DNA of 64,000 nt from Macrostomum lignano (lineage: Eukaryota): assembly GCA_002269645.1 (NCBI GenBank), contig NIVC01000642.1:149586-213585 (forward strand). Direction: 5' to 3'. A program made the position numbers and the translations under genes. Position 1 is the first letter of the stretch; each line of letters starts with the position of its first letter. Below, piece by piece: positions 1,452 to 64,000 of the stretch. The notes under the pieces are model-generated. The model did no database searches, was not told the DNA's origin, and was given only the letters and a program-made list of their open reading frames with translations.

Positions 1452-2175
1452 TGGTAAATTTGGTATCGGTAGGAGTAGAGTGTGGTAAATTTGGTATCGG
1501 TAGGAGTAGAGTGTGGTAAATTTGGGATCAGTAGGAGTAGAGTGTGGTAAATTTCGGATCGGTAGGAGTAGTGTGGTAAATTTGGGATCAGTAGGAGTAG
1601 AGTGTGGTGAATTTGGGATCAGTAGGAGTAGAGTGTGGTGAATTTGGGATCGGTAGGAGTAGAGTGTGGTAAATTTGGGATCGGTAGGAGTAGAGTGTGG
1701 TAAATTTGGGATCGGTAGGAGTAGTGTGGTAAATTTGGGATCAGTAGGAGTAGAGTGTGGTGAATTTGGGATCAGTAGGAGTAGAGTGTGGTGAATTTGG
1801 GATCGGTAGGAGTAGAGTGTGGTAAATTTGGGATCAGTAGGAGTAGAGTGTGGTGAATTTGGGATCAGTAGGAGTAGAGTGTGGTGAATTTGGGATCGGT
1901 AGGAGTAGAGTGTGGTAAATTTGGTATCGGTAGGAGTAGAGTGTGGTAAATTTGGTATCGGTAGGAGTAGAGTGTGGTAAATTTGGTATCTGTAGGAGTA
2001 GAGTGTGGTAAATTTGGGATCGGTAGGAGTAGTGTGGTAAATTTGGGATCAGTAGGAGTAGAGTGTGGTGAATTTGGGATCAGTAGGAGTAGAGTGTGGT
2101 GAATTTGGGATCGGTAGGAGTAGAGTGTGGTAAATTTGGGATCGGTAGGAGTAGAGTGTGGTAAATTTGGGATCA
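1452..2175. repeat. 31-bp minisatellite (GGTAGGAGTAGAGTGTGGTAAATTTGGGATC)n, probably intronic
   Basis: Direct 31-bp periodicity, about 23 copies, ending ~120 nt upstream of the acceptor at 2295. Confidence 0.95.
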
Positions 2176-2295
2176 GGTGTGGGATCTCTGCAGTTAGTAC
2201 TTGTTTTGTTAAAGGATCAGTGGGTACATTGAGTTGGTGTGCAAGCGGCATTTAATGGCTACATATTGCTGCCCCTTATCGCCTCTCCGCCTCAG

Positions 2296-17500: not shown

Positions 17501-17695
17501 CGGCAGGTTAAAGTGTCCACAGTTTGGTTCCTCAGTTAGCAGGCGCATGAAATGCGGTGACGCCGCCGCTAGAACGCATTTGTGCACCAGAAAGCGGCGC
17601 CCGTGAACGCTAATCTGCAGATCGCAAAACATGCCCTCCTCGCGTAGCTTGGCCAGCTTGGCCAGGTGATCGGGTATGCCACTAGGCTCAGACAT
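10987..17695 (-). CDS. BTB-BACK-Kelch (Kelch-like family) protein, ~759 aa
   Basis: Exons (-): 17695-17308, 16396-16265, 15134-14626, 13505-12957, 12247-12023, 11463-10987. Total 2280 nt; intron phases 1,1,0,0,0 all match. BTB motif FCDLQISVHGRRFLVHKCVLAAASPHF; BACK-like LVDGIDNYIVQHLAEIV; Kelch repeats LLVAGGYN, VFACGGSDG, VFAVGGRYG, LWVAGGSDG, LWLVGGSDG, LLALGGFSG. Confidence 0.9.
11498..11655. repeat. (CTGT)n microsatellite in Kelch intron 5
   Basis: Tetranucleotide run read directly. Confidence 0.95.
12290..12915. repeat. 31-bp minisatellite in Kelch intron 4 (GCTGAGGAGTGCATGATGAGAAGATGCTCAA)n
   Basis: Direct periodicity, about 20 copies. Confidence 0.95.
13567..14617. repeat. 28-bp minisatellite in Kelch intron 3 (GGAGGCTGGCYCAGCAACTGA[GGAT/CACT]CTG)n
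   Basis: Direct periodicity with two interspersed variants; starts ~9 nt inside the donor end of the intron. Confidence 0.95.
15155..15820. repeat. 21-bp minisatellite in Kelch intron 2 (CTGCCAGCTCTTGTTTGTGYG)n
   Basis: Direct periodicity; explains ORFs 15122-15855. Confidence 0.95.
16470..17245. repeat. ~39-bp minisatellite in Kelch intron 1 (GATCTGAGATCCATGGGAGATTAGTGGCGACACCTGTGG)n
   Basis: Direct periodicity with indel variants. Confidence 0.9.
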
Positions 17696-21041: not shown

Positions 21042-21725
21042 TCACTTCGGATTAAAGAGACGACCACAGGATTTAAGCAGCCGCCGAGTGCTTCGAGTAC
21101 CTTGTTCATGTTCCGCCCAGTAGCGAAATAAACGAGACTGAACTGTGCGGTACCCTTGCCGCTGCTCTCGACGCAGTACCCCTCTGGACAGCAGGTGAGC
21201 CTGGAGTGGCACCAGGATAGCTTCCTCGTGGAGCAGTTGCAGCAATAGATAGAACTGGAGGTTGCGTCTTCCCAGCTTTACGGTTTAGGCGATAGTGCCA
21301 GCCCTCCAGGTCGTTGTTGGTCCTGATGGGCTGACCAAACACGCAAATGTCATCCGCTTTCCAGTTGCTGCCTTTGCCCAACCATGTACTGCCAATGTAC
21401 TCGCATAGTTCCTGCAGCCTTTCGTCTACCTGAGCAGCTTGCGAAGCTCGGAGGCTTTCAAACACCTCGTTAATCTCGTCACGTGGCAGGTACGGCAGTG
21501 CCATCAACTTCCGGACGAACCGTTCTGTGCCATCATCATCACGATAGGACTGCTGCAGACCCACGTTCTGAACTTTTCGCCAGACTGCCTAGGTCCAGTG
21601 GAAATTGCAGCCCTGCACTTCAGCCTGCGGAAAGATGCATCGAACCGCCTTCCAGGCTGGCTGCTCATAGTCGAGAACGAATCTCGCGGGTGAGAAATCG
21701 GGAGCGAATCTTCGAACTTCCCTTA
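21042..21725 (-). pseudogene. MULE transposase C-terminal remnant
   Basis: Translation FVLDYEQPAWKAVRCIFPQAEVQGCNFHWT*AVWRKVQNVGL...LMALPYLP...RTNNDLEGWHYRLN carries the MULE D(F/Y)E, CxFH and RTNNxxEGWH motifs. Premature TAG at 21591-21589, a frameshift near 21260 (continues in ORF 21042..21245), and the N-terminus is absent. Confidence 0.85.
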
Positions 21726-42538: not shown

Positions 42539-45500
42539 TCATTCCTGCAGCCGGCCGTCCTCGATCAGGCGATCCAGGAAGTAGCGCACCCGGTCCATCT
42601 CCTCCACCCTGTTGGTCATCCGGACAACGTCGAGCAGCTCCTTGATGCCGACATTCAAATGCCGATTCTGCGTCTCCTTCTTGATCCTGTCCAGCTCCTC
42701 TTTGGTGAACTCGGCGCTGTCAACTTTTTTCAGCGCCTCCAACAGTTCGTCAGAATTGGTGAGATTGCTGACGTGAATCTTGCCGGCCGTGAAGCACTGG
42801 ACAAGGCCGAGTTCGAGCAGCGCCTCCCGGCAGCTGGTGGTGCCCAGCAGCAGCAGGCTGCGATTCTTCGGCAGCGGCGCAGTGATCAAATCGCGGAGCG
42901 CCTGCAGCACGTAGTTCGAATACCTGGCATTGGGGTCAGGGCGGTTGCTTTGTCATGTTTTAATACAAAACACTCGCTGCTATCTTCTTCAGTGGGCGAC
43001 CGTGTCTCTTGGTGTGGGCGCCCCCGTCTCTTGGTGTGGGCGCCCCCGTCTCTTGGTGTGGGCGCCCCTGTCTCTTGGTGTGTGGGTGCCCCCTGTCTCT
43101 TGGTGTGGGCACCCCTGTCTCTTGGTGTGTGGGTGCCCCCTGTCTCTTGGTGTGGGCGCCCGTGTCTCTTGGTGTGTGGGTGGCGGGTGCCCCCTGTCTC
43201 TTGGTGTGGGCGCCCCTGTCTCTTGGTGTGTGGGTGCCCCCTGTCTCTTGGTGTGGGCACCCCTGTCTCTTGGTGTGTGGGTGCCCCCTGTCTCTTGGTG
43301 TGGGCACCCCTGTCTCTTGGTGTGTGGGCGCCTCCCGTCTCTTGGTGGGCCAGGGGGTCTGATGGCGCGAGAATCAGGCTTGTCCTGTTCGCTGTTCCTG
43401 TTACTCTGACTTCAGTAGTAGCGTAAGGTAGTATTTTATCAGTAATACGTCGTGCATTGTTACTGATAGTAGTAGTATATGCGTAGATTTTGCAAGACAT
43501 GTATCACGCAATTAAATATCTATTACTAAATTACAAAAGTAGAAGACTCATGATGCAATTCATTGCAGAAAACTGCATTCAGCTCACCTGGGCCCAACAG
43601 GGCTGTAGTCAATAAGGCCTTCTAACCCGTCCAAAATAATCACGGCCTGTTTGGCTTTGTGCGCGTCGTCAAAGTGCTGCTTAATAGCCTGGCATTTGGC
43701 CACCTCGCTGTAGCCAATCATGCGCTTGCTGGTGCACAGTCGGACATAGGAGAATCCCGATTGGCGGGCGATGTGCACCGCCAGGGCGGTTTTGCCTGCG
43801 GCGAGAATTAATAAAACACGGATAGTTAAGCAATGTGCTTAAAACAGGTCGCACCTACCGATCAGGTAGGTATGCCAAGACAAGAGGTGTCTGGGGGGTG
43901 ACACCAAGACAGACACTAACCATGTGACATCAAGACAGACACCATCCAGGTGACACAAAGACACCATCCAGGTGACACCAAGACAGACACCATCCAGGTG
44001 ACACCAAGACAGACACCATCCAGGTGACACCAAGACAGACACCATCCAGGTGATATCAAGACAGACACCATCCAGGTGACACCAAGACAGACACCATCCA
44101 GGTGACACCAAGACAGACACCATCCAGGTGACACCAAGACAGACACCATCCAGGTGAAACCAAGACAGACACCATCCAGGTGACACCGAGACACCATCCA
44201 GGTGACACCGAGACAGACACCATCCAGGTGACACCAAGACAGACACCATCCAGGTGACACCAAGACAGACACCATCCAGGTGACACCGAGACACCATCCA
44301 GGTGACACCGAGACACCATCCAGGTGACACCGAGACACCATCCAGGTGACACCGAGACACCATCCAGGTGACACCAAGACACCATCCAGGTGACACCAAG
44401 ACACCATCCAGGTGACACCAAGACACCATCCAGGTGACACCAAGACACCATCCAGGTGACACCGAGACACCATCCAGGTGACACCAAGACAGACACCATC
44501 CAGGTGACACCAAGACAGACACCATCCAGGTGACACCGAGACACCATCCAGGTGACACCGAGACACCATCCAGGTGACACCGAGACACGCCAGTCACTCA
44601 CCGCTATTAGGCGGCCCCTCGAGCAGCAGGGCCACGGGCCGACCGCTGTCCAGGCTCTGCTCGGCCTCGGCGCGGGCGGCCCTGGTGGCCAGACTGCCGT
44701 TCTGCACGATGTGCTGCACCGGCTCGCCCCAGTCGATGATGCCGCCAGTGATGTAGCGGTCCAGCTCCTCTTCCTGGGTGCCGAACGCCGGCTTGACGTC
44801 GTGCTCGAGCGCGTGCATGAAATCGCCGCGCTGTACAAGGAGGCGATCCACGGCGTCCGGATCCAGCCGGACAGTGTCCGAGGCCTGCAAATGTTATTAG
44901 TCGGTGATCCAGTGTATTGCCTTTTTAGTCAACTTCCAAATTTAGCTTCCGGTCTATAGGGTATGTAGCTTCCGGTCTATCGGGTATTCAGCTTCCGGTC
45001 TATCGGGTATTTAGCTTCCGGTATGTCGGGTATTCAGCTTCCGGTCTATAGGGTATTTAGCTTCCGGTATGTCGGGTATTCAGCTTCCGGTATGTCGGGT
45101 ATTCAGCTTCCGATCTATCGGGTATTTAGCTTCCGGTATGTCGGGTATTCAGCTTCCGGTCTATAGGGTATTTAGCTTCCGGTCTATAGAGTATTTAGCT
45201 TCCGGTATGTCGGGTATTCAGCTTCCGGTATGTCGGGTATTCAGTTTCCGGTCTATCGGGTATTTAGCTTCCGGTCTATCGGGTATTTAGCTTCCGGTAT
45301 GTCGGGTATTCAGCTTCCGGTCTATCGGGTATTCAGCTTCCGGTATGTCATGATAATAAAAATCTGATCTGACCAAATTTCCAACGGCCTTGGAAGGGGC
45401 TCACCTGCACCAATCGGTTCATGGCAGTCACGGTGGCGGCCCGAACCAGGCCAGCCAGTTCGGCGCCAGAAAAATTCTTCGTCTCCTTGGCCAGCTCCTG

Positions 45501-45761
45501 AACGTCAACGTCCTGCGCCAGTTTGCCGTTCTTGCGCAGCTGCCCCGTGTGGATCTCCAGGATCTGCAGCCGGCCGTGCTGGTCCGGCAGGCTGATCTCC
45601 ATTTGAACCTCGAAACGGCCCGGGCGGAGCAGAGCCTCGTCTATCATGTCCTTGCGATTGGTCATGCCGATCACCAGGATGTTGTTCAAGGGCTCCACGC
45701 CTTCCATCTTGGTTAGCAGCTGGTTCACCACCGTGTCGTGCACCTGGGAAGATAGATAGAC

Positions 45762-45816
<55 letters not shown>

Positions 45817-46285
45817 CAGATCCTCCCTACCTGCGTGCCACCGCCAACCGAGCCGCGAGTTTTGCAGATGGCGTCAATCTCGTCAAAGATGATGATGTGC
45901 AGGGCGGAGTTGTTGCCAACCCGTTTGTACTCTTCCTCGGCCTCGGCAAATAATTGCCGAATTTTCGACTCGCTCTCGCCGACATATTTATCCAGAATGG
46001 ACGGTCCGTTGACGATTTTTGGTTCGCGGGCGTTCAGCATCTTGCCGATCTGGCGGGCCATGAGGGTCTTGCCGGTGCCCGGCGGCCCGTACAGCAGCAG
46101 ACCGCGCACGTGGTTCATGCCCAGCTGCTCCACCAGGTCCGGCGGGAAGATCCTTGAGGCAAATGTTCGACGAAATATGTCGCTAAATTCTCTGTCTAGG
46201 CCGCCGATGCCCATCATGCTGAAGTTCCAGTCCGGATTGATGATGGACTGGTACACCTGGGAGTGGCGGCGGGGCGGGCGGCGCT

Positions 46286-46366
<81 letters not shown>

Positions 46367-46537
46367 GCAGACAGACAAACAGACAGGCAGGCAGACAGAC
46401 AGACAGACAGGCAGGCAGACAGACAGGCAGAGAGACAGTCAGACAGACAGACAGACAGACAGACAGTCAGACAGACAGACAGACAAGCAGACAGACAGAC
46501 AGTCAGACAGACAGACAGACAAGCAGAAAGACAGACT

Positions 46538-46586
<49 letters not shown>

Positions 46587-46635
46587 GCAGACAGACAGGC
46601 AGGCAGGCAGACAGACAGGTAGACAGACAGGCAGG

Positions 46636-46674
<39 letters not shown>

Positions 46675-46696
46675 GCAGGCAGACAGACAGACAAGC

Positions 46697-46741
<45 letters not shown>

Positions 46742-46768
46742 GGCAGACAGACAGACAGACGGAGATTC

Positions 46769-46808
<40 letters not shown>

Positions 46809-47799
46809 GGACAGACAGACAGACAGACAGGCAGGCAGACAGACAGACAGACAGACAGACAGACACAGACAGACAGACACAGACAGCGAGTCAAGTGAGC
46901 AACCATATCATTCAAATTAGCCCCACCTGCTTGCCCTTAGCCTTGCCGGTGAGGGTCAGTGGTGAGTCGGCGCTCAGTTTCTCAAACGTGACGATGGTGT
47001 TGCCAGAGACAATGCCAGTCTTAGCCGGCTCTGTGCGGCCGTCGGGCAGCAGGAGCTCCAGCTCTTTGACACGCAGCAGCAGGTGCCGCTTGTCCTTGTA
47101 TTTGAAGACCAGCTCCTGGCCGACTGTCAGGGGCATCTGAGGGAAGCACTGGGTGAACTCCACCCGCATGTCGTCCGTGTTGTAGGGATCGTTGGTTGCG
47201 CTGCAGTGCGTGCGGAGTTTGGATGGAGAGTTGCGATGATTTTGAGAGAAAATGTTAGACTGCACTACTCAAAGTAGAGTTAGAGACATTTCAATTCCAC
47301 TCATACATGCGCGACCTCCAAAATTTGGTTGGCCGTGCGACTTAGTTTTAACAAAAATGCGACGTAGTTGTTGGCCAAAAATGCGACTTACATGTAAAAA
47401 ACGCAATTAACGCAACTTTGGGTAAACGGCAGGAGTAACTATAACTGTCTTATAAAGCCAAAATGCCTCGGCAGCTACTTAGTACTACTACTTGGTGCTT
47501 TTTGGGTGGGCATTTTTGCGACTTCCATGGTTGGCCGCCAAATCGGTCGGCCGGATAGGCCGACTCGGCCGACTGTTGCGCATGTATGATTCCACTTGTA
47601 AAAGTAAAAACCTGTCCCTAAATGTACTTTTGTTCTCAGACTGGTTTGCTTTTAGCGTCTGTTTATGTGTGTGCATGTCTGTTTTTAGTGTCTGTTTTGT
47701 CTACTTTAATGTCTTTCTGTCTGTGTCTGCCAGCCTGTATGTCTGTCGGTTTGTCTCAGTGTCTGCTTGTGTCTGTCTGCCTGTCTACCTGTCTACCTA

Positions 47800-47838
<39 letters not shown>

Positions 47839-48399
47839 GCCTGTCTGTCTGAATCTCCGTCTGTCTGTATGTCTGTTTGTCTGTCTGTCAGCCTGTATGT
47901 ATGTCTGTTTGTCTCAGTGTCTGCTTGTGTCTGTCTGCCTGTCTACCTGTATGATATCTGTGTCTGTCAGCCTGTATATCTGTCTATTTGTCTCAGTGTC
48001 TGCTTGTGTCTGTGTGTCTGTCTGCCTGTCTACCTATTTGTCTGTCTGTCTGTCTGTTGTCTGTCTGTCTGTCTGTCTGTCTGACTGTCTGTCTGACTGT
48101 CTGTCTGACTGTCTGTCTGTCTGTCTGTCTGTCTGAATCTCTGTCTGTCTGTCTGCCTGTCTGTCTGAATCTCCGTCTGTCTGTATGTCTGTTTGTCTGT
48201 CTGTCAGCCTGTATGTATGTCTGTTTGTCTCAGTGTCTGCTTGTGTCTGTCTGCCTGTCTACCTGTATGATATCTGTGTCTGTCAGCCTGTATATCTGTC
48301 TATTTGTCTCAGTGTCTGCTTGTGTCTGTGTGTCTGTCTGCCTGTCTACCTATTTGTCTGTCTGTCTGTCTGTTGTCTGTCTGTCTGTCTGTCTGTCTG

Positions 48400-48449
<50 letters not shown>

Positions 48450-48904
48450 GCCTGTCTGTCTGAATCTCCGTCTGTCTGTATGTCTGTTTGTCTGTCTGTC
48501 AGCCTGTATGTATGTCTGTTTGTCTCAGTGTCTGCTTGTGTCTGTCTGCCTGTCTACCTGTATGATATCTGTGTCTGTCAGCCTGTATATCTGTCTATTT
48601 GTCTCAGTGTCTGCTTGTGTCTGTGTGTCTGTCTGCCTGTCTACCTATTTGTCTGTCTGTCTGTCTGTTGTCTGTCTGTCTGTCTGTCTGTCTGACTGTC
48701 TGTCTGACTGTCTGTCTGACTGTCTGTCTGTCTGTCTGTCTGTCTGAATCTCTGTCTGTCTGTCTGCCTGTCTGTCTGAATCTCCGTCTGTCTGTATGTC
48801 TGTTTGTCTGTCTGTCAGCCTGTATGTATGTCTATTTGTCTCAGTGTCTGCTTGTGTCTGTGTGTCTGTCTGCCTGTCTACCTATTTGTCTGTCTGTCTG
48901 TCTG

Positions 48905-52201: not shown

Positions 52202-55200
52202 TCACAGCAGCGCCTTGTGCCGGGTCTCGAACGCTTCCAGCTCGCGCACAATCTTGGCCCGCTCGCGGAGCGCCTTCCAAGCGGCGTCGCGGTCCTTCTT
52301 TAACGGCTGGCGTCGCTTCTGCCGGTAGGCCTGCAGCCTGGCGTGCGCCTCCACCACGTCGGCGTCGGCCACAGCCAGGCGACGCCGGATGGCCTGCCGC
52401 TGCGTGTCCAGCTTGGCCGCCGCGTACAGCCGCCGCAGCGTGGCCCTGTTGAAGTCGCACAGTCGGCGAAGCTCGCGCTGCCGTCCGCGCAGCGCCGTGG
52501 CCACCTCGTCGTCCGGATCGGCCGAGGCCGAGGATGAGGAAGTCAACTGGGCGGCCGCGGCGGCTGCGGCGGCGGCAGCTTCAGCGGCGGCGGCTGCGGC
52601 CACCGCGCCCTCTGAGTCGCTTTCAGCGCCGGCTCCTCCAGCGCTGGCGGCGCCGCTGGCGGCCCCGGCAGCTGCGAGCCTGCCGGGCGAGACGCCGTGC
52701 CGTTCGAGCTGCTTGCGGAGCCGGCGCTCCAGCTTGCAGCTGTTGGAAACCCCCAGCAGTTTGGCCAGCTGCTTGGTTGGCAGCGCGGCGAGCTGCGCTG
52801 TCTGCTGCATCTGCGGTGCGGCGAGATGAGGCTTTGATGGCCTGAACTCCTTACTGACACAGTCCTGAACTCAATACTGACACAGTCCTGAACTCCCTAC
52901 TGACACAGTCCTGAACTCACTACTGACACAGTCCTGAACTCAATACTGACACAGTCCTGAACTCACTACTGACACAGTCCTGAACTCACTACTGACACAG
53001 TCCTGAACTCCCTACTGACACAGTCCTGAACTCACTACTAACACAGTCCTGAACTCAATACTGACACAGTCCTGAACTCACTACTGACACAGTCCTGAAC
53101 TCACTACTGACACAGTCCTGAACTACCTACTGATACAGTCCTGAACTCACTGCTGACACAGTCCTGAACACCCTACTGACACAGTCCTGAACTCACTACT
53201 GACACAGTCCTGAACTCACTACTGACACAGTCCTGAACTCACTACTGACAAAGTCCTGAACTCAATACTAACACAGTCCTGAACTCACTACTGACAAAGT
53301 CCTGAACTCACTACTGACACAGTCCTGAACTCACTACTGACAAAGTCCTGAACTCACTACTGACACAGTCCTGAACTCACTACTGACACAGTCCTGAACT
53401 CACTACTGACACAGTCCTGAACTCACTACTGACAGACCAAACTCAATACTGACAGCACAGCAGCCGGTCTCACCAGTCCAGGATCGTCAGTGTCGGTCAG
53501 GGTCTCCGACTTGCAGACTCCGCTGTCTTCATCGTCATTGGCCACCAGAGCGGCCACCAGCTGCTGAGCCAGCGGCCCCAAACCGCCCGCATCGGCGCCG
53601 GCGCCAGAGTCCGCGCTGCCCAATGGCGTCGAATCGACGCAAATCTCGGCCTGCAGGCGCATCATGAGAGCGGCGCCATTGTCGCCAGCCGACTGTTGCT
53701 GGGAAGAATCGGAGGTTGGCAGCAATCCAGCGTCGATCTCGCCGCCATGTTCGGCAATGGCGCCGTTACGACCATTTTTGCCGTTGCTGCTGTTGCTGCT
53801 GCTGCTGCTAATGCCGTTGAAGCCGCTGGCCGACTTCGACTCGCCGTTGCTGGCGACCTCGGCGGCGGCCGAGTTAGGCAGCGGCGGCATCCGGAAAAAG
53901 CCGGAGTCTTCGCCGATCTCGTACGATCGAATTAGCAGCTCCAGCGAGTGCAGATTGTCCTCCGTGATCTCGGCGCAGTACGGCTCCATCAGGGCCCAGA
54001 ATTTGTTCGGCACCTCGTAGAGACCCGGCGGTGCGTCAGCCTGCTGCTGAGGTGTCGCCGACTCCGCCGCCGAGTCGGAATTAGCCGAAGCTCCAGCAGG
54101 TGCAGAAGCAGCAGCCGCAGCGACAGCAGCCGCCTTGTTCTTCCGCTGCTGATAGACACCGCCTGGTCGGAGCGGCTTGTTGTTTCCTGGAAAAGCGGCC
54201 ACCGCGGCGGCGGCCGCGGCTCGTTTAGCCGGCGGCGCCAGAACTTCATCGGCAGACAGAGGACTGGCTGAGGCGTCGGCAGCGGCTGCGGCACCTGCTG
54301 AAGTGTTGCGCTTTTTTTATCACCTTCAGATCTATCCTTCGGATCCGTCCTTCTTATCTATCCGTCCGTCTATCTATCCGTCCTTCGGATCTATCCGTCT
54401 ATCCGTCCGTTTATCTATCCGTCCTTCGGATCTATCCTTCGGATCTACCCTTTGGATCTATTATTCGGATCTACCCTTCGGATCTATCCTTCGGATCTAC
54501 CCTTCGGATCTATCCTTCGGATCTATCCTTCGTATCCTTCGGATCTATCCTTCGGATCTATCCTTCGGATCTATCCTTCGGATCTATCCTTCGGATCTAT
54601 CCTTCGGATCTATCCTTCGGATCTATCCTTCGGATCTATCCTTCGGATCTATCCTTCGGATCTATCCTTCGGATCTATCCTTCGGATCTATCCTTCGGAT
54701 CTATCCTTCGGATCTATCCTTCGGATCTATCCTTCGGATCTATCCTTCGGATCTATCCTTCGGATCTATCCTTCGGATCTATCCTTCGGATCTATCCTTC
54801 GGATCTATCCTTCGGATCTATCCTTCGGATCTATCCTTCGGATCTATCCTTCGGATCTATCCTTCGGATCTATCCTTCGGATCTATCCTTCGGATCTATC
54901 CTTCGGATCTATCCTTCGGATCTATCCTTCGGATCTATCCTTCGGATCTATCCTTCGGATCTATCCTTCGGATCTATCCTTCGGATCTATCCTTCGGATC
55001 TATCCTTCGGATCTATCCTTCGGATCTATCCTTCGGATCTATCCTTCGGATCTATCCTTCGGATCTATCCTTCGGATCTATCCTTCGGATCTATCCTTCG
55101 GATCTATCCTTCGGATCTATCCTTCGGATCTATCCTTCGGATCTATCCTTCGGATCTATCCTTCGGATCTATCCTTCGGATCTATCCTTCGGATCTATCC

Positions 55201-55861
55201 TTCGGATCTATCCTTCGGATCTATCCTTCGGATCTATCCTTCGGATCTATCCTTCGGATCTATCCTTCGGATCTATCCTTCGGATCTATCCTTCGGATCT
55301 ATCCTTCGGATCTATCCTTCGGATCTATCCTTCGGATCTATCCTTCGGATCTATCCTTCGGATCTATCCTTCGGATCTATCCTTTAAATCTTTAGCAGTC
55401 AGCTAGGACCTGCGGCTTATCATACTAGACTGTATCAGAATTCCCACTTAGGAGTAGAACAATTGGAACATCGTGTCACAGTTTTTATTTCAAAGCTGGC
55501 AACAAAAACTGAGCCCTGAGCTATTTCTCGTTGTCTCACCGTCAGCGCTTGTCGAGTCCTCGCGACGCCGCTTCAAGGAGATGGTCAGAGCCAGCGGCTT
55601 GCCGGGAACTGACTTGACCACGGCCGCTCCCGGCAGCCATTCTGACTTGTTCGACCGGGTGATCAGGCCGCCAGGCAGTGGGGTGCCGCTGATCTCCGCG
55701 GCAAGCAGGAAGCTGCGCTTGTTCACATTGGCTAGCAGGGTCTCAGCCTCCCACTGCAGCCGGTCAATGTCCTCCGGCCGGACAGCTGGCCGGCTCAGCA
55801 GGGCAGCGATGCCTGGACACTCGGACTCCAGCGTCACCGACGGCAGCCACAGCGGGGACAT
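52202..55861 (-). CDS. TADA3: Transcriptional adapter 3 (SAGA/ATAC HAT module), ~601 aa; start codon uncertain
   Basis: Exons (-): 55861-55540, 54297-53454, 52841-52202, phases 1 and 2, total 1806 nt. Motifs EDIDRLQWEAETLL, PNKFWALMEPYCAEIT, GPLAQQLVAALV, DDEVATALRGRQREL...KKDRDAAWKALRER match ADA3. The frame is open upstream of 55861, so an extra 5' exon is possible. Confidence 0.9.
52842..53453 (-). repeat. 23-bp minisatellite forming essentially all of TADA3 intron 2
   Basis: Unit (-) GTCAGTAGTGAGTTCAGGACTGT, about 26 copies, spanning donor to acceptor. Confidence 0.95.
54328..55383. repeat. 13-bp satellite (GGATCTATCCTTC)n in TADA3 intron 1
   Basis: Roughly 70 copies, mostly perfect. 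Confidence 0.97.
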
Positions 55862-55959
55862 TGTTGAGTCGGCCGCCGTCTGCCCGCCTCTGTGCGACTG
55901 ACCGCTCTTGGACTTCGACTGCGGGCATGATGCAGCGATGAAGATGGCAGATATCTCAG

Positions 55960-56560
55960 AGAATTCCCATAGACACTGCCTAACAATTCCCATAGACACT
56001 GCCTAACAATTCCTATAGACACTGTCTAACAATTCCCATAGACACTGCCTAACAATTCCTATAGACACTGTCTAACAATTCCCATAGACACTTTCTAACA
56101 ATTCCTATAGACACTGTCTAACAATTCCCATAGACACCGCCTAACAATTCCCACAGACAAATCTTAACAATTCCCATAGACACTGCCTAACAATTCACAT
56201 ATACACCGCCTAACAATTCCCATAGACAAATCTTAACAATTCACATAGACAAATCTTAACAATTCCCATAGACAAATCTTAAGAATTCCCATAGACACTG
56301 ACTAACAATTCCCATAGACACTGACTAACAATTCCCATAGACACTGACTAACAATTCCCATAGACACTGACTAACAATTCCCATAGACACTGACTAACAA
56401 TTCCCATAGACACTGACTAACAATTCCCATAGACACTGCCTAACAATTCCCATAGACAAATCTTAACAATTCCCATAGACACTGACTAACAATTCCCATA
56501 GACACTGACTAACAATTCCATAGACACTGACTAACAATTCCAATAGACATCAACAAGAAC
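55960..56560. repeat. 23-bp minisatellite (AACAATTCCCATAGACACTGCCT)n, array 1
   Basis: Direct periodicity. Confidence 0.95.
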
Positions 56561-57224
56561 TTCCAGAGACAACACCAAACATTCCCCATAGACATCCACT
56601 AACTAGATAGACACCCAAAGCCCATTCCTCTAGCTTACTAACAGTAGTGAAATCTAACACTGCAGCATTTTTATGACAAAAAAACAGCCTGTAGGACGCA
56701 TTATACATGGCGCAATGAAGCAATCTATGCAGCCGCCACACCTGTATGCGTCCGGCATCTTGAAAACACCTGCTATCCATTTTTCAGATCGGTGTTCGCC
56801 TACTGTAAGCTGGTTGCCGAGCAGTTCTATAGTCAATTTCATTGCAAAGTTATAAATGCACTTGACTATGAATGCATTTGGCAAACCAGCTATAAAGACG
56901 ATAGTTTAAAACTTAAAACTTTCTAAATCACATCATATCTGTTATTAAAGATAATACAATGAAAAAGCCAAACTATTATTTCAGGAAAAAGAAGACTAAA
57001 TAAAATAAATTTAAAATGAAACCGTCTATATTTCTGCTTTAGCAAAAGAAAACAATGCAAAGGTTTGGTGCAAAAAGTGGTGGGGGGAATTCGATAAATC
57101 TTTAAGGCTTAGATAAAAAATACAATATCATTGTGCTACTAACAGTAGCATGTACGGACTTCAAGCCAGTTTGGAACTAAAACATGCAGTTGGCTTATCA
57201 AGTTTCTGATAAGAGATGTTTCTG

Positions 57225-57690
57225 ATATTCCCATAGACACCCATAACAATTCCCATAGACACCCATAACAATTCCCATAGACACCCATAACAATTCCCAT
57301 AGACACCCATAACAATTCCCATAGACACCGCCAAACCATCATCATAGACAATGCCAAACAATTCCCAGAGACACTGCCTAACAATTCCCAGAGACACTGC
57401 CTAACAATTCCCATAGACACTGCCTAACAATTCCCATAGACAATGCCAAACAATTCCCATAGACACTGTCTAACAATTCCCATAGACACTGCCTAACAAT
57501 TCCCATAGACACCGCCAAACAATTCCCATAGACACCGCCAAACAATTCCTATAGACACTGCCCAATAATTCCCATAGACACTGCCCAATAATTCCTATAG
57601 ACACTGCCTAACAATTCCCACAAACACCGCTTGAAAATTCATTTAGACCTAACAATTTTCATAGCCAATGTCTAACAATTCCCAGAGACA
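57225..57690. repeat. Same 23-bp minisatellite, array 2
   Basis: Same unit as 55960-56560, separated by ~660 bp of unique DNA. Confidence 0.9.
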
Positions 57691-58484
57691 CCGCCTAGAC
57701 AGATTACAATGCGTATTCTGTATTCACTTTCAGCTACTACTGTTAGTAAAGAAAAACTTATGATAACAAGTGGGTACAAACTTACAATCAAAATACATAC
57801 ATAGCTACTGATATAAAAGGGCAGTAGTAATTCGAGGTTATTAAACAGCTTTTTGAGGAGCTAGGAAGGCAAAAAAATTCCAAATTATCAGCAGTTAGCA
57901 CACGAACTCTAGTATGTGGCAGCAACATCTTGAGCACAGGGTACAATATCATCCCAAAAAACAACAAAAATTGATTGTAAAAAAAGGTCGTCAAGTCAAA
58001 AAGTAAACCGATTAGGGGAAAAACTAGAGCATTGAAAAAAGAAGGCACAATATGCATATAGGCTTCAGATAAGGATAAATCTCTATCTATATTCTATATA
58101 TAGAAATCTAAATGGTAAAACAGAGAATAGCAAAGAAAGCTACTGACAGGGTAGATCTGCAGCAATTCTGTCTAGATGACACCCGGTCGTCGCAAGTATG
58201 TGACAAAAACAATTTGAAAATTTAAAAAATAAATCAGAAAGCCGATGATTACCAGCTAAAAACAAAGTAAGCTAAGATACTACATACAAAACATTAAATA
58301 ATATAAAAACTCTGATTGATGGCTGCATGTCTATACAGATGATGCAAGGCTTGTGGGCGTGACCGATCCAAACAAGTGCACTGGGTAACTTTTAGTAAGC
58401 AACAGATGAACTGGTAGATTGATAGCATTCATTTTGGCTGGTTGGGGAGCGGTAGATACAGCATAAAGGTAGAAAAGTTGAGGG

Positions 58485-58760
58485 TAGCTGGGTAGATTAG
58501 AATGTAGCTGGGTAGATTAGAAGGTAGCTGGGTAGATTAGAGAGTAGCTGAGTAGATTAGAGAGTAGCTGAGTAGATTAGAAGGTAGCTGGGTAGATTAG
58601 AAGGTAGCTGGGTAGATTAGAGAGTAGCTGAGTAGATTAGAGAGTAGCTGAGTAGATTAGAAGGTAGCTGGGTAGATTAGAAGGTAGCTGGGTAGATTAG
58701 AGAGTAGCTGAGTAGATTAGAAGGTAGCTGGGTAGATTAGAGAGTAGCTGAGTAGATTAA
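58485..58760. repeat. 20-bp minisatellite (AGTAGCTGRGTAGATTAGAG)n
   Basis: Direct periodicity. Confidence 0.9.
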
Positions 58761-58784
58761 AGATATAAGAATAGACATTAAACA

Positions 58785-59030
58785 TAAGCAGCTGAGCACA
58801 GGCCAGACAGCAGCTGAGCACAGGCCAGACAGCAGCTGAGCACAAGCCAGACAGCAGCTGAGCACAGGCCAGACAGCAGCTGAGTACAGGCCAGACAGCA
58901 GCTGAGCACAGGCCAGACAGCAGCTGAGCACAGGCCAGACAGCAGCTGAGTACAGGCCAGACAGCAGCTGAGCACAGGCCAGACAGCAGCTGAGCACAGG
59001 CCAGACAGCAGCTGAGCACAGGCCAGACAA
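58785..59030. repeat. 22-bp minisatellite (CAGCTGAGCACAGGCCAGACAG)n just after the ASB stop
   Basis: Direct periodicity, about 11 copies. Confidence 0.9.
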
Positions 59031-59037
59031 CACCCAG

Positions 59038-60696
59038 CTACTCCGGCCAAGGCCAGGCCGGCAGTCCCAGGCAGAGGAAGTCGCGCAGCCTGCAGGGCAG
59101 CCAATTAGCGGTCTGCCTGGCCGCTGTCGGGCCGAGCTGCCGCAGTCGGCGCCAGACGGCTCGCCTGGCCAACGCAGTCAGCTGCTCCGGCCGCTGCCCC
59201 GCAGCCGTGGCGGCCGTCCACGCGGCCAGAGGCGCTTGGCCAGTCGACATCGGCCGAGGCGGAGCGGCGCCGAAAGCGAGCAGAACTTCGGCAACTCGGC
59301 AGTGGCCGCGAGAGCAGGCAACCGCCAGCGGCGTTTCGGCGGCTGGACCGCAGCGGCAGCGGCAGCGGGCCTCCAGATCGGCGCCGGCGCTGGCCAGCAG
59401 GATGGCCGCCTCCGGCTGGTTGTGCGCGGACGCATAGTGCAGCGGCGAGCCCAACCGGCTGTGGGAATCCAGCAGCGGAGGAAAGGGCTATGGCATGTTT
59501 TTATAGCCCACTACAAATTATTCCATCAATACGCTTACACTGCCGCTGTCAGTGGCAAAGAACACTTTTGATCCAATTTCTTTAACGACCGTATGGTTTT
59601 TTGTGCAGTTTTTTGGTGATGTACTTTTACTGAAAAACTCTAGCCGTCAAAAACATTTCTTAGAAATATCAATAATAATCGCCCGGTTTGGCAAATGACC
59701 TGCCCCAAGCCTCACCTGTCCGCCCCTAAGCCTCACCTGTCCGCTCCTAAGCCTCACCTGTCCGCTCCTAGGCCTCACCTGTCCGCTCCTAAGCCTCAAC
59801 TGTCCGCTCCTAGGCCTCACCTGTCCGCTCCTAAGCCCACCACCTCAAGCCTCACCTGCCCACCACCTCAAGCCTCACCTGCCCACCACCTCAAGCCTCA
59901 CCTGCCCACCACCTCAAGCCTCACCTGCCCACCACCTCAAGCCTCACCTGCCCACCACCTCAAGCCTCACCTGCCCACCACCTCAAGCCTCACCTGCCCA
60001 CCACCTCAAGCCTCACCTGCCCACCACCTCAAGCCTCACCTGCCCACCACCTCAAGCCTCACCTGCCCACCACCTCAAGCCTCACCTGCCCACCACCTCA
60101 AGCCTCACCTGCCCACCACCTCAAGCCTGACCTGCCCACCACCTCAAGCCTCACCTGCCCACCAACTCAAGCCTCACCTGCCCACCACCTCAAGCCTCAC
60201 CTGCCCACCACCTCAAGCCTCACCTGCCCACCACCTCAAGCCTCACATGCCCACCACCTCAAGCCTCACATGCCCACCACCTCAAGCCTCACCTGCCCAC
60301 CACCTCAAGCCTCACCTGCCCACCACCTCAAGCCTCACCTGCCCACCACCTCAAGCCTCACCTGTCCGCCCGATCCAGACAGGCGCCCCGCTCAATCAGC
60401 AAGCGCACTAGTGCCAGATGTCCCGATCCCACTGCCATGTGCAGCGGCGTGGAGCCCCAATCGTTAGCGGCGTCCAACTTGGCGCCACGGCCAATCAGAA
60501 AGGCGGCAACCTCGAAGCAACCGGCTGCGCAGGCCTCGTGCAGGCCGGTGTTGCCGTTTGGGCCGGCGCGCGTGTCGACGCCGAGATCGCCGGCGCCGAG
60601 GCTGCGCGCCACGGCTGAGAGGCGGCCAGCGCGCACGTGACCAAGCCAGCGGGCGGCCTCAGCCTCGCGATGGGCGGCAGTCAATAAGAGCATCAT
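59038..60696 (-). CDS. Ankyrin repeat and SOCS box protein (ASB family), ~251 aa
   Basis: Exons (-): 60696-60362 and 59458-59038, phase 2, total 756 nt. Ankyrin repeats GNTGLHEAC, GSTPLHMAV, GSPLHYAS, ETPLAVAC. C-terminal SOCS-box-like PEQLTALARRAVWRRL...LPCRLRDFL. Confidence 0.88.
59700..60361 (-). repeat. Array of 23-bp and 21-bp units, each containing the 5' splice site CAG|GTGAGG
   Basis: Units (-) GTGAGGCTTGAGGTGGTGGGCAG (~23 copies) then GTGAGGCTTAGGAGCGGACAG (~6 copies), beginning at intron nt 1. Confidence 0.95.
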
Positions 60697-61104
60697 TTGT
60701 TTGCAATATTCAAAATTCTTCCATTGATTTACTTGTACTACCGCTAATAGCAGTGTGAATATATTTTTGAAGCATTTTGGCAAAAATATCTTTTTAAAAA
60801 CCCTTAACTGCCCCTATAAGTAGCACGGATCTAAAAAAAAGCTAAATTAAAATATGCTAGAAACGCTGCTGTATCCAACCCTACAAGCCGCCCCCGCTTT
60901 ACTATCGCGCTCGCTCTGTCTGACCCCCTCTAGCCGCAGGCGCGTCTTTGCAAACACAATGCTGAAATGTTAGCGAAAAATAAAAAGTTAAATGGAGGCC
61001 GGAGTACCACTGGAACTGCAGTAGCTGCGGAAAATGTTGAACAAGTTAGTAACGAAAATGGCTAATCGAATAATAGGTGACAGACCTTATGGCTTATAAA
61101 AGGA

Positions 61105-61670
61105 GGGCGGTGAGGGGCGGATTCAAGGACTGCTCATGGGAGCGCAGAGGCAGATTCAAGGACTGCTCATGGGAGCGCAGAGGCAGATTCAAGGACTGCT
61201 CAGGGAGAGCGGAGAGAGGCAGATTCAAGGACTGCTCAGGGAGAGCGGAGAGAGGCAGATTCAAGGACTGCTCATGGGAGCGCAGAGGCAGATTCAAGGA
61301 CTGCTCATGGGAGCGCAGAGGCAGATTCAAGGACTGCTCATGGGAGCGCAGAGGCAGATTCAAGGACTGCTCATGGGAGCGCAGAGGCAGATTCAAGGAC
61401 TGCTCAGGGAGAGCGGAGAGAGGCAGATTCAAGGACTGCTCAGGGAGAGCGGAGAGAGGCAGATTCAAGGACTGCTCATGGGAGCGCAGAGGCAGATTCA
61501 AGGACTGCTCATGGGAGCGCAGAGGCAGATTCAAGGACTGCTCATGGGAGCGCAGAGGCAGATTCAAGGACTGCTCATGGGAGCGCAGAGGCAGATTCAA
61601 GGACTGCTCATGGGAGCGCAGAGGCAGATTCAAGGACTGCTCAGGGAGAGCGCAGAGAGGCGGATTTAAG
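61105..61670. repeat. 33/36-bp minisatellite (GATTCAAGGACTGCTCATGGGAGCGCAGAGGCA)n
   Basis: Two interspersed unit variants. Confidence 0.95.
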
Positions 61671-61928
61671 GACACACAGAGAGCACAATTAGTTTATTTC
61701 ACGCTAGTGAAAGGTGAAGCAACGTGACAAATAAAAGCCTAAATAAAATTTGAAATTGAACCGAACATAAAGACGCAATTATTAAGAAATGCCAGTCATT
61801 TAACAAAGAAATCCAGCAACTCGAAACCAATATATTTTGCTAGCAAATCACTTTTCTAAACACTGCTAAAAGTTCAACCTGCCAAAACGTCAAGCGCACA
61901 GCAGCAGCGGCACCTCGCTAAGGCTGAC

Positions 61929-62262
61929 CTGAACGTCCACCGGGTCAAACAGTTCGTTATCAAGAAAATAAGGCGTCTCTTTTTTCTTTTGCTTCTCCAG
62001 CTCTTCCGGCGTAGGCTGCTGGGCCGACGCGGCGGCCTCATTGTTGCGCAACAGGCGGACAGAGACGCCGCCAGCCAGTAGTTGAGTCTCAGAGCAGTCA
62101 GTGTAGAACTGATCGATTCGAGCTGCGGCAGTGGAAGAGTCGCCACCAGACAGTCTGGTGCCGATGGCCCGCCACAGCTGGCCGCCTGATAGGCGAGCTG
62201 GGAGCACCTGGCAATGAAATGTTGCGGGCAGCCTTCGCTTCTGAGATCCCAGATCACAGTCC
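61929..62262 (-). CDS. Orphan coding exon of an unidentified gene
   Basis: GC-rich island with acceptor tacttctag|G and donor CAG|gtcagc. Open frame DCDLGSQKRRLPATFHCQV...PYFLDNELFDPVDVQ with G/C-rich third positions. The frame could also run on to a stop at 61890. Confidence 0.5.
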
Positions 62263-63610
62263 CTAGAAGTAGTAATAGAAAATTACGTCCATACCTCACT
62301 TTTCAATTGCAAAACACGTAATAAGGTACCCGTCAGAAATTTTATTACGCACATACCTTATTTTTGTATTAAAAATCAAGTAGTAAGGTACCGAACCAAA
62401 TGGTAGGGTATTCTACAGGAATTGTAACTACACTGCACCGCACCCACAAAGAACGAGAAAGAAAAGACCCCAACAACACCAATCAACCAAGTTGCTGAAA
62501 AACGACAGCTATTTCTGCATTACAAGAATAGAGGAAACACACACCCACAAAGAACAAAAGAAAAGATCTTAATAAATTGCAGAAGTCAAAATTGTGCCAC
62601 AATCCCTCTGCAAGCAAAACCCAGCTCAGAACAGGACACAGGCAGTAAATAAGCCACGTGCTGCGCCCAGCGTTTTTTGTAACAGGAGTCATTCAAGACC
62701 CCAATTTTTTCATTTTCGAGAAAAGACCATTGAGACTTACGAAACTAAGTATACTTGAATACAACTTGACTAAAATATAATACGCCAAAAGAAATATGCA
62801 GTTTTTAACTCTCAGTCACCGATCGAGAAACCGATCAAATCCAAAAAACCAGGTAATTGTAAGTGTTGCTGTGACAAGATCCGCCTGAGTTCGGTACTGA
62901 CGGCCATGCACAATAATAAACTGAACCATCGTAGTAAGAAACAGTCTTTCGGTCGAATCAAGTTGACATGTCTATATATTTTAACAGATGAGATACACGA
63001 TTAGTTAATTCATGACGTTAATTTCTTGATGCAAATGAACGCAAAAATGCGATTTGACAGTCTTTTAAATAACTTTAAAATTCCCTAACGAATAGTGGAT
63101 AAATAATTACAATACTAATAATACCAAATTATTTACGAGCTTCGTTCCATTGCACAGTCAGGCGTCCGCAGTCAAATCGCAGTAGTCAACCGTAGTGACT
63201 CTTCCCGACTCCTTCTCCCTGAAGAAGAAACGGAAGCAGCCAGCACCTAGGGCTTGTACAGCCAGGGCGTATTTACCTTCGCAAGCCGTGACATGCTCGG
63301 GTACATATATATCCCGGCGGCGGCCGCGCAAAGACCCCGTTCTTGAACGCTGCAAAGAGAGAAGACGCAGCCCATTACTACCTCATTAGCCTCTGAATAA
63401 ACAAAAAGCCAATGCTTACCATCTCTCACATATCGCTCAGCTAGTTCCTTCTTTTGCGCGATTTGTCCATATTGGTAGTGAGTGAATGCGTTTAGACAAG
63501 ACTAGAAAATTTTCCGGACTGCTGTCGGTAGGATCTTATATTCAGCAAAATTACTCATAGGGACGACTGAGATCTCATGTGGTGGATTAGGGAGGGTCAG
63601 GGTTGGTTGA

Positions 63611-64000
63611 GAGGAAGGGTGGATCGAGTTGGGAGCCACCAACGTAAAGGGAGCGAGAAGGGGGTTCGTTCTACCTAGTCAGCAGAGGGTTTCGCGTTGG
63701 CGGCAGCTGCAACCTTTAGATGATAAAGACTATTTCTTTGTGGCGAATACAGACACTTCGAATCTTCCTGGTAGGCATTGGGTTGTAGTTGGGTGAGTAG
63801 CAGGCGGTTAGGGGGGCGCCGTGGACGAAAGAGTCGGGGAATATTTTGATACGCTTGGTTTAAATCCATCGGAAAATATTAGACGGTGGTTGAGGCGAGA
63901 ATGTGGGGATTTTCAAAATTGGTCCTACAGCCGATTTGCTATTCAGGATCCTCGGACTGGTCATTGTGGTATTTGGGTGTTGTTTTATTTGTATTTCAAA
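63611..64000 (+). pseudogene. Adenain-type (clan CE, C5-like) cysteine protease of a Polinton/Maverick or related virus-like element; truncated by the window edge
   Basis: Frame 63719+3n reads DDKDYFFVANTDTSNLPGRHWVVVG*VAGG*GGAVDERVGEYFDTLGLNP...WSYSRFAIQDPRTGHCGIWVLFYLYFK. This shows NTD-PGxHW (His), EYFD (Asp) and IQ-x5-HCG (Gln, Cys) in the expected order. Stops at 63794-63796 (TGA) and 63809-63811 (TAG). Confidence 0.8.

What the first reader, a model, noticed from the sequence alone, without database searches (positions are those of the whole stretch)
63611..64000. Adenovirus-type maturation protease: edge of an endogenous Polinton/Maverick-like virus
This frame is not in the ORF track because two stops split it, yet the His-Asp-(Gln)-Cys catalytic set and the NTD..PGxHW signature are intact. 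In animal genomes such proteases mark Polintons/adintoviruses, which also encode pPolB, integrase, packaging ATPase and jelly-roll capsids. Both stops are one C-to-T change from CGA and CAG, suggesting a young inactivated copy. The element probably continues past the window and is the best lead for an undescribed viral element.
Basis: partly seen in the sequence, partly recalled or inferred. Interest (0 to 1): 0.72.

Follow-up and report, generated by a model that had tools for sequence, protein, structure and literature searches.

The report
Dead fragment of Polinton-type viral protease
The last 282 bases of the window are a broken, partial copy of the capsid-maturation protease gene of a Polinton/adintovirus-type DNA virus, left in an animal-type chromosome; this is a common kind of viral fossil, and no other gene of the virus is in the window.

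Summary
Window 63719-64000 (+) matches a profile of 58 distant family members, built without its two close relatives, at 75.6 bits (E 1e-24). It is the only such hit in the six-frame window. The His, Asp, Gln and Cys columns are kept, there are two in-frame stops, and there is no frameshift.

The family is viral-type clan CE, not cellular SENP/Ulp1:
- Its profile hits ASFV S273R (3e-16) and adenain (1e-11), against SENP8 at 1e-3.
- A model of the closest intact relative matches adenovirus proteases best in the PDB, and an adintovirus 'Adenain' at TM 0.65 among viral models.
- Relatives sit in gene arrays with pPolB, A32-like ATPase, rve+chromo integrase and a double-jelly-roll capsid gene. The capsid gene always lies directly upstream of the protease.

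The 'edge of an element' reading is not established. The copy lacks about the first 34 of 150 profile positions. The capsid gene is absent upstream, and no other Polinton gene remnant occurs in the 64 kb. I could not reach the DNA beyond base 64000.

The best reading is a decayed, 5'-truncated endogenous fragment: a new member of a known kind, of low interest. Intact but unnamed relatives (56-61% identical) exist in public read assemblies.

The parts
63719..64000 (+). Partial, broken copy of an adenain-like (clan CE, viral Ulp1-type) cysteine protease gene of a Polinton/adintovirus-type element. It corresponds to residues ~52-143 of the 190-aa relative P0001 and to profile positions 35-117 of 150. 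Breaks counted: 2 in-frame stops, 0 frameshifts, N-terminal part missing (1 truncation). The 3' end (about 47 codons in the closest relatives) lies beyond the window.
   Evidence: (75.6 bits, E 1e-24; HMMER envelope starts at 63680)

Best explanation
Window 63719-64000 (+) is a dead, partial germline copy of the capsid-maturation cysteine protease gene of a Polinton/Maverick-adintovirus-type dsDNA virus-like element. The protease is adenain-like, of clan CE ('vUlp1'). The fragment lies in non-coding DNA of a cellular, animal-type chromosome, next to ankyrin-repeat exons and minisatellites.

In intact relatives the gene encodes a stand-alone 145-190 aa protease with the ordered catalytic set His, Asp, Gln (oxyanion hole), Cys. 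Its start lies at or within about 40 bases of the end of the double-jelly-roll major capsid gene, and overlaps it by four bases in the closest relatives. By analogy with adenain, it is inferred to be packaged and to cleave capsid and core precursors. The closest relative also encodes an adenovirus pX/mu-like core protein.

The window copy cannot make a protease. It has two in-frame stops, lacks the N-terminal third, and has lost the capsid gene that precedes it in all relatives.

What is shown: homology, family assignment, the breaks, and the absence of other element genes in 64 kb. What is inferred: the fragment descends from an integrated element (rve integrase in relatives) whose upstream part was later removed by deletion or rearrangement, or it entered as a fragment. 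At most the protease 3' end plus a terminal or accessory region follows beyond the window.
For: Homology:
- Two intact relatives at E 5e-32 and 2e-26.
- An independent distant-member profile hits only this stretch: 75.6 bits, E 1e-24.
- 14 of 17 highly conserved columns are kept.
- The catalytic H, D, Q and C columns are conserved.

Viral type:
- PDB profile hits are S273R 2.8e-16 and adenain 1.4e-11, against SENP8 1e-3.
- 41/60 members match Peptidase_C5.
- The AF2 model of P0001 has pLDDT 88. Its top five PDB fold hits are adenovirus proteases, and it matches adintovirus Adenain at TM 0.65/0.66.

Element context of relatives:
- L003 carries Adeno_PX (33 bits, above the cut-off), rve+Chromo, a 442-aa capsid-like gene and the protease.
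- L006-L010 carry pPolB PF03175, an A32/IVa2-like ATPase, rve+Chromo, a ~440-aa capsid-like gene and the protease.
- The capsid-like protein matches DJR capsid proteins by fold and has a weak PF21738 hit.

Decay and truncation.

Host setting: ankyrin, NSF and BTB/kelch exons and tandem repeats.

Literature: Polintons encode pPolB, RVE integrase, vUlp1, ATPase, MCP and mCP (PMC11161782). Adintoviruses are defined by Adenain, PolB, rve with chromodomain and FtsK, and degraded copies are endogenized in many animals (PMC8502044).
Against: - The window fragment on its own reaches no Pfam gathering score. P0001 and P0002 have no significant Pfam hit either. The family assignment therefore rests on profiles, fold and context of relatives.
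- The structure evidence comes from a relative at 61% identity, not from the window sequence.
- The DNA beyond base 64000 could not be obtained: 20 exact look-ups of window ORFs failed. 'Solitary remnant' is therefore inferred from one side only.
- In one arrangement of relatives (L008/L009), more than 9 kb of element genes follow the protease on the opposite strand. More of an element could therefore lie downstream.
- The host species is unknown.
Confidence: 0.85

Rival explanations
1. The fragment is the first visible piece of a larger, possibly multi-gene, endogenous Polinton/adintovirus-type element. That element would continue beyond base 64000, with its replication module downstream of the protease, and would be truncated or rearranged only at the protease 5' side.
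For: - In L008/L009 the protease is followed on the opposite strand by small ORFs, an A32-like ATPase, a PC4-like gene and a 1531-aa pPolB.
- L006 and L010 have a few accessory ORFs after the protease.
- The window ends inside the gene, so something of the element certainly continues for at least the missing ~47 codons.
Against: - The capsid gene that precedes the protease in all ten related loci is absent, and so is the protease N-terminus. The element is therefore not intact whatever follows.
- In the closest relative (L003) the visible element genes (a pX-like gene, integrase and capsid gene) all lie upstream of the protease, and in L006 and L010 the ATPase and pPolB do too.
- The contigs of the closest relatives end 80-270 bases after the protease stop, and similarity between them stops at that stop codon.
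Confidence: 0.3
2. It is a pseudogene or exon of a cellular Ulp1/SENP-type (C48) desumoylating protease, or of a protease domain carried by another class of transposon, unrelated to Polintons.
For: - The only Pfam hit of the window fragment itself is Peptidase_C48, at E 0.11.
- 15 of 60 family members also touch C48.
- One member in a sea-cucumber genome is named 'Ubiquitin-like protease family' by UniRef.
Against: - The family profile scores adenain and ASFV S273R 8-13 orders of magnitude better than SENP8 or SENP1.
- In the fold search SENP5 is only rank 34.
- Relatives are short stand-alone ORFs abutting a DJR capsid gene inside pPolB/integrase arrays.
- No further exons of such a gene are seen upstream (one search found a single hit).
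Confidence: 0.03
3. The stretch is not host DNA. It is a mis-assembled read or contig end from an exogenous virus that contaminated the sample.
For: - The match sits at the very end of the window, so its right-hand junction cannot be seen.
- Closely related intact sequences occur as short contigs in read archives.
Against: - The copy carries two stops and lacks its 5' part, which a replicating virus would not tolerate.
- It runs without a visible seam from host-type sequence.
- The window end is an arbitrary cut, not a contig end.
Confidence: 0.03

Closest known systems
Adintovirus / Polinton (Maverick) 'Adenain' or vUlp1 protease (class Polintoviricetes; Starrett et al. 2021, PMC8502044; PMC11161782)
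   Same: - Short stand-alone clan CE protease with ordered His, Asp, Gln and Cys.
- Best two-way fold match of the closest relative is 'Adenain [Terrapene box turtle adintovirus]', TM 0.65/0.66, E 6.7e-9.
- Relatives share the adintovirus gene set: pPolB PF03175, FtsK/A32-like ATPase, rve integrase with chromodomain, a pX-like core protein and a DJR capsid gene.
- Degraded endogenous copies in animal genomes are described for this group.
   Different: - The window holds only 94 codons of the gene, broken and truncated, with none of the partner genes.
- The closest clade (L001-L004) carries no names or Pfam marks in the databases.
- That clade's proteases have a ~45-residue C-terminal helical extension beyond the usual ~146 aa.
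- Sequence identity to typical family members is about 32% (median).
Adenovirus proteinase, adenain (MEROPS C5; PDB 1avp, 4piq)
   Same: - Same fold and same catalytic order.
- Family profile hit at E 1.4e-11 covering the His, acid and Gln-Cys motifs.
- Top five PDB fold hits.
- A pX/mu-like putative substrate is encoded in the closest relative.
   Different: - Only 14-18% identity in the structural alignment.
- The window fragment and P0001 do not reach the PF00770 cut-off.
- Dependence on a pVIc-type peptide and on DNA cofactors is unknown.
- The element carries an integrase, which adenoviruses lack.
African swine fever virus pS273R and poxvirus I7L core proteases (clan CE, C63/C57)
   Same: - pS273R is the best sequence hit in the PDB, both for the single sequences (E 0.013-0.039) and for the profile (2.8e-16).
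- These too are virion polyprotein or core-protein maturation enzymes.
   Different: - They are larger proteins (273-420 aa) with extra N-terminal domains, from giant-virus genomes.
- Fold ranks are 7-8 (pS273R) and 17 onwards (I7L).
Cellular Ulp1/SENP/NEDP1 proteases (Pfam PF02902, MEROPS C48)
   Same: Same clan and the same catalytic residues. Weak hits: C48 at E 0.11 for the window fragment, SENP8 at 1e-3 for the profile.
   Different: - Much weaker than the viral hits.
- No SUMO- or NEDD8-binding N-terminal context.
- Relatives are capsid-linked viral ORFs, not spliced host genes.

Membership tests
Adenain-like / viral Ulp1 clan CE cysteine proteases | Ordered catalytic residues His ... 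Asp/Glu ... Gln (oxyanion hole) ... Cys | tested here: met
   All four columns are present in the window fragment. They are invariant or at least 90% conserved in alignments of 5, 60 and 100 members. They align to the corresponding motifs of 1avp and 6lj9 in the profile alignments.
Adenain-like / viral Ulp1 clan CE cysteine proteases | Significant sequence match of the window sequence itself to a family profile | tested here: met
   A profile of 58 distant members, with the close relatives left out, gave 75.6 bits, E 1e-24. This was the only hit in the six-frame window.
Adenain-like / viral Ulp1 clan CE cysteine proteases | Reaches the curated cut-off of Pfam PF00770 (Peptidase_C5) | tested here: not met
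   The window fragment has no C5 hit; C48 scores E 0.11, 12.8 bits against a cut-off of 20.7. P0002 scores C5 at E 0.12, and P0001 has no hit. However, 41 of 60 family members match C5 at E <= 0.01, best 2e-10.
Adenain-like / viral Ulp1 clan CE cysteine proteases | Adenain-type fold | tested here: met
   Tested on the closest intact relative P0001, not on the window fragment. The AF2 model has pLDDT 88.3. PDB ranks 1-5 are adenovirus proteases, E 5e-7, TM 0.53-0.62. BFVD gives adintovirus Adenain at TM 0.65/0.66.
Adenain-like / viral Ulp1 clan CE cysteine proteases | Complete open reading frame able to give an active enzyme | tested here: not met
   Two in-frame stops; the first ~34 of 150 profile positions are missing; the C-terminal part lies beyond the window.
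Adenain-like / viral Ulp1 clan CE cysteine proteases | Proteolytic processing of capsid/core precursors; cofactor dependence | not testable with these tools
   Inferred only from homology and from the pX-like gene in L003.
Polinton/Maverick-adintovirus element (this locus as an element) | [quoted passage not shown] | tested here: not met
   tblastn of all ORF pieces of ten related loci, including three pPolB genes, found no match in the window. DNA beyond 64000 was not available.
Polinton/Maverick-adintovirus element (this locus as an element) | Retrovirus-like rve integrase | tested here: not met
   No match in the window. It is present in relatives L003, L005, L006, L008 and L010.
Polinton/Maverick-adintovirus element (this locus as an element) | FtsK/A32-type packaging ATPase | tested here: not met
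   No match in the window. It is present in L005, L006, L008 and L010.
Polinton/Maverick-adintovirus element (this locus as an element) | Double-jelly-roll major capsid gene next to the protease | tested here: not met
   In relatives the ~416-446-aa capsid-like ORF ends at or within about 40 bases of the protease start, overlapping it by four bases in L001-L003 and L010. Its model matches DJR capsid proteins. The window has no protein or DNA similarity to it upstream of 63719, or anywhere else.
Polinton/Maverick-adintovirus element (this locus as an element) | Terminal inverted repeats and 6-bp target-site duplication | tested here: inconclusive
   Only short chance-level inverted repeats occur in 61700-64000. 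At most one end could lie in the window, so this is not decidable.
Polinton/Maverick-adintovirus element (the protease's family) | Relatives of the protease reside in arrays carrying the hallmark genes | tested here: met
   L003, L005, L006/7, L008/9 and L010.
Cellular Ulp1/SENP proteases (C48) | Closest sequence and fold relatives are SENP/Ulp1/NEDP1 | tested here: not met
   SENP8 scores E 1e-3 and SENP1 0.15, against adenain 1.4e-11 and S273R 2.8e-16. SENP5 is rank 34 and the NEDD8 protease rank 43 in the fold search.

The most novel reading that the evidence does not exclude
The fragment and its intact, unnamed relatives in public read assemblies would belong to an undescribed adintovirus-like lineage that is, or recently was, active in the host's group. 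These relatives are L001-L004: three lineages 77-78% identical in DNA to one another, with overlapping open reading frames. A larger provirus of this lineage would lie just beyond the window end.
Probability: 0.2. Interest if true: 0.4.

Novelty: new member of a known kind. Interest (0 to 1): 0.2.

Why it matters
It matters little for the window itself. Degraded Polinton/adintovirus pieces are common in animal genomes, and this one is a 94-codon dead fragment.

It has modest value in three ways:
- As a marker that this host lineage was once invaded by such a virus.
- As a pointer to a clade of intact, unannotated relatives that extends the known diversity of adintovirus-type elements. That clade has a 442-aa DJR capsid protein, a 183-190-aa protease with a C-terminal extension, a pX-like core protein and a chromodomain integrase.
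- As a worked example showing that a weak single-sequence Pfam result (E about 0.1) can hide a solid family assignment.

Tried and rejected
1. Short intron instead of stops. I considered that the two stops might lie in a very short intron. I rejected this because intact relatives have coding sequence aligned across that stretch in the same frame.
2. N-terminal extension. I looked for homology in the open stretch 63611-63718. It has no profile match and no DNA similarity to the relatives' protease 5' end or capsid 3' end. The MAFFT alignment there needs a 27-column gap.
3. Minus-strand look-alike. A His-motif look-alike at 63382-63423 on the minus strand scores E 3.4, which is chance.
4. IMG/VR scan for relatives: none confirmed.
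5. Reaching the DNA beyond the window. Exact look-up of 20 window ORFs near the end found none in the collection.
6. Identifying host or sample. A search for run and assembly accessions in papers gave only irrelevant hits. Rfam found nothing in the window.
7. Pfam and PDB sequence searches for the capsid-like neighbour gave no significant hits. Its AF2 model is poor (pLDDT 54). The fold hits to DJR capsid proteins are therefore supportive, not conclusive.

Full report
OBSERVATION. Translating the + strand frame that the finding names gives a continuous reading from 63611 to the window end, interrupted by two stops. I used the frame as it stands throughout.

On its own the fragment gives only marginal database hits. 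Pfam gives Peptidase_C48 at E 0.11. The PDB gives the ASFV cysteine protease S273R at E 0.039.

The protein collection returned two intact relatives, P0001 (190 aa) and P0002 (183 aa), at 61% and 54% identity, E 5e-32 and 2e-26. tblastn places the match at 63719-64000, all in one frame, corresponding to residues ~52-143 of P0001.

As a test that does not depend on these close relatives, I searched 1.84 billion representatives with their alignment. That gave 800 proteins at E <= 1e-3, mostly stand-alone ORFs of 140-180 aa. I then built a profile from 58 of the distant ones and scanned the six-frame window. The only hit is 63719-64000: 75.6 bits, E 1e-24, profile positions 35-117 of 150, envelope from 63680.

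The His, Asp, Gln and Cys columns are invariant or nearly so in alignments of 5, 60 and 100 members, and all are present in the window copy. The copy keeps 14 of the 17 columns that are at least 90% conserved.

Two corrections apply. Homology does not begin at 63611, because the upstream open stretch has no profile match. The copy therefore lacks the N-terminal third of the protease. Breaks counted: two in-frame stops, no frameshift, one 5' truncation. The 3' end is outside the window.

WHAT KIND OF PROTEASE. It is not.
- The 60-member profile hits ASFV S273R at 2.8e-16 and adenovirus proteinase (1avp) at 1.4e-11. SENP8 scores 1e-3 and SENP1 0.15.
- Scanned one by one, 41 of 60 members match Pfam Peptidase_C5 (adenovirus endoprotease) and 15 match C48.
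- An AlphaFold2 model of P0001 built on 100 relatives is confident: pLDDT 88, pTM 0.85.
- Its five best PDB matches are adenovirus proteases (E 5e-7 to 3e-6, TM 0.53-0.62). They are followed by bacterial CE effectors, ASFV pS273R and poxvirus I7L. SENP5 is rank 34.
- Among predicted viral structures the best two-way match is 'Adenain [Terrapene box turtle adintovirus]': E 6.7e-9, TM 0.65/0.66, rmsd 3.6.

WHAT THE RELATIVES BELONG TO. In the contigs of P0001 and P0002 the protease start overlaps by four bases the end of a longer ORF. That ORF is a 442-aa protein (P0003/P0004) with a weak hit to Pfam 'Double jelly roll-like domain'.

Its model is poor (pLDDT 54), yet its matches among viral structures are almost all double-jelly-roll major capsid proteins: MELD virus, adomavirus LO7, virophages, giant viruses and ASFV p72. 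The top hit is a Cotesia sesamiae Mombasa bracovirus protein at 26% identity, E 5e-22.

The 5.9-kb contig L003 carries, in one direction:
- a protein with an adenovirus pX/mu domain (33 bits, above the cut-off);
- an rve integrase with a chromodomain;
- a basic 162-174-aa ORF;
- the capsid-like gene;
- the protease.

More distant members, on NCBI genome contigs and metagenome contigs of 15-36 kb, show the full set. That set is a ~1450-1530-aa pPolB (PF03175 in L006-L008), an A32/IVa2-like ATPase, rve+Chromo, two small ORFs, a ~430-446-aa capsid-position ORF and then the protease. L005 adds an ATPase, a pX-like gene, rve, a capsid-like gene and a protease.

This is the gene set that the literature gives for Polintons (pPolB, RVE integrase, vUlp1, ATPase, MCP, mCP; PMC11161782). 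It is also the set given for adintoviruses (Adenain, PolB, rve with chromodomain, FtsK, pX-like domains), for which degraded copies in animal germlines are reported (PMC8502044).

WHAT IS AT THIS LOCUS. The window is cellular, animal-type DNA. It holds exons with ankyrin repeats (59.0-60.8 kb, minus strand), NSF (42.5-46.3 kb), and BTB and kelch domains (12.9-17.7 kb). These are interspersed with many minisatellites.

I translated every ORF piece of at least 80 aa from the ten related loci and compared them with the whole window. Only the protease fragment matches. There is no trace of pPolB, ATPase, integrase or capsid genes (also tblastx). The 720 bases upstream of the fragment have no DNA similarity to the capsid 3' end or the protease 5' end of the relatives.

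So the gene that abuts the protease in every relative is gone, together with the protease N-terminus.

In the collinear relatives (L003, L006, L010) the rest of the element lies upstream of the protease. In L008/L009 the replication module follows it on the other strand. What lies beyond base 64000 therefore cannot be deduced. I could not fetch it, because 20 exact look-ups of window ORFs were not in the collection.

The contigs of the closest relatives end 80-270 bases after the protease stop, and similarity between them stops at that stop codon. This fits a protease near an element end, but it does not prove it.

MECHANISM.

Shown:
- The fragment is homologous to a capsid-linked viral clan CE protease.
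- It is broken and truncated.

Established knowledge: adenain uses a His/acid/Cys triad with a Gln oxyanion hole, and it matures capsid and core precursors inside the virion.

Inferred:
- In the intact element the protease does the same job. The pX-like gene in L003 fits this.
- The window copy makes no enzyme.
- It descends from an integrated element, or from a piece of one, that was later truncated by deletion or rearrangement.

RIVALS.
- A larger rearranged element continuing downstream: 0.3.
- A cellular SENP/Ulp1 pseudogene: 0.03.
- Contamination or mis-assembly: 0.03.

COMPARISON AND NOVELTY. The fragment works like, and by profile, fold and context belongs with, the Polinton/adintovirus 'Adenain' (vUlp1) proteases. 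It is not an intact member, and the locus fails every element-level test that could be run in the window.

The closest clade (L001-L004) is unnamed in the sources. Its proteases have a C-terminal helical extension. It is made up of three lineages 77-78% identical in DNA to one another.

This is a new member of a known kind, and the window holds only a relic of it. Interest 0.2.

Noticed in passing
window 55000-61700 (and throughout, e.g. 600-1300, 13700-15900, 43000-48700, 54400-55400): Very dense minisatellite arrays produce long spurious ORFs on both strands. Examples: a perfect 13-nt unit x29.6 at 55000-55384, 23-nt units at 55962-56549, 57227-57697 and 59835-60364, and a 33-nt unit at 61116-61673.
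   Followed up: partly
window 42542-46346 (-), 59041-60783 (-), 12924-17695 (-): Host exons: NSF-type AAA ATPase with the NSF lid domain, an ankyrin-repeat protein, and BTB and kelch domains. They show that the window is a cellular, animal-type chromosome. The species was not identified.
   Followed up: partly
window 21106-21564 (-), inside the AT-rich block ~18-28 kb: A 152-aa ORF without any Pfam hit sits in a block of 28-35% G+C that contrasts with its 45-59% neighbours. It may be a remnant of another mobile element.
   Followed up: no
L003:7-516 and L005:1061-2083, 2099-3121: A protein family without Pfam hits is shared by the close and the distant relative (31% identity over 87 residues, E 4e-9). 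It is present as two tandem paralogues of 340 aa in L005. Its function in these elements is unknown.
   Followed up: partly
L003:3750-5078 (P0004): The best structural match of the capsid-like protein is an uncharacterised protein of Cotesia sesamiae Mombasa bracovirus (R9XLG5, 26% identity, E 5e-22). This suggests a related element inside that wasp bracovirus genome.
   Followed up: no
L010:14692-15463: Arrays of ~77-nt repeats in both orientations lie about 4-5 kb downstream of the protease in this 35.6-kb metagenome contig. They may be a terminal repeat region of that element.
   Followed up: no
L003:3229-3753: The ORF between the integrase and the capsid gene has a strongly basic Lys/Arg-rich C-terminal half and no Pfam hit. 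It is a candidate DNA-condensing core protein.
   Followed up: no
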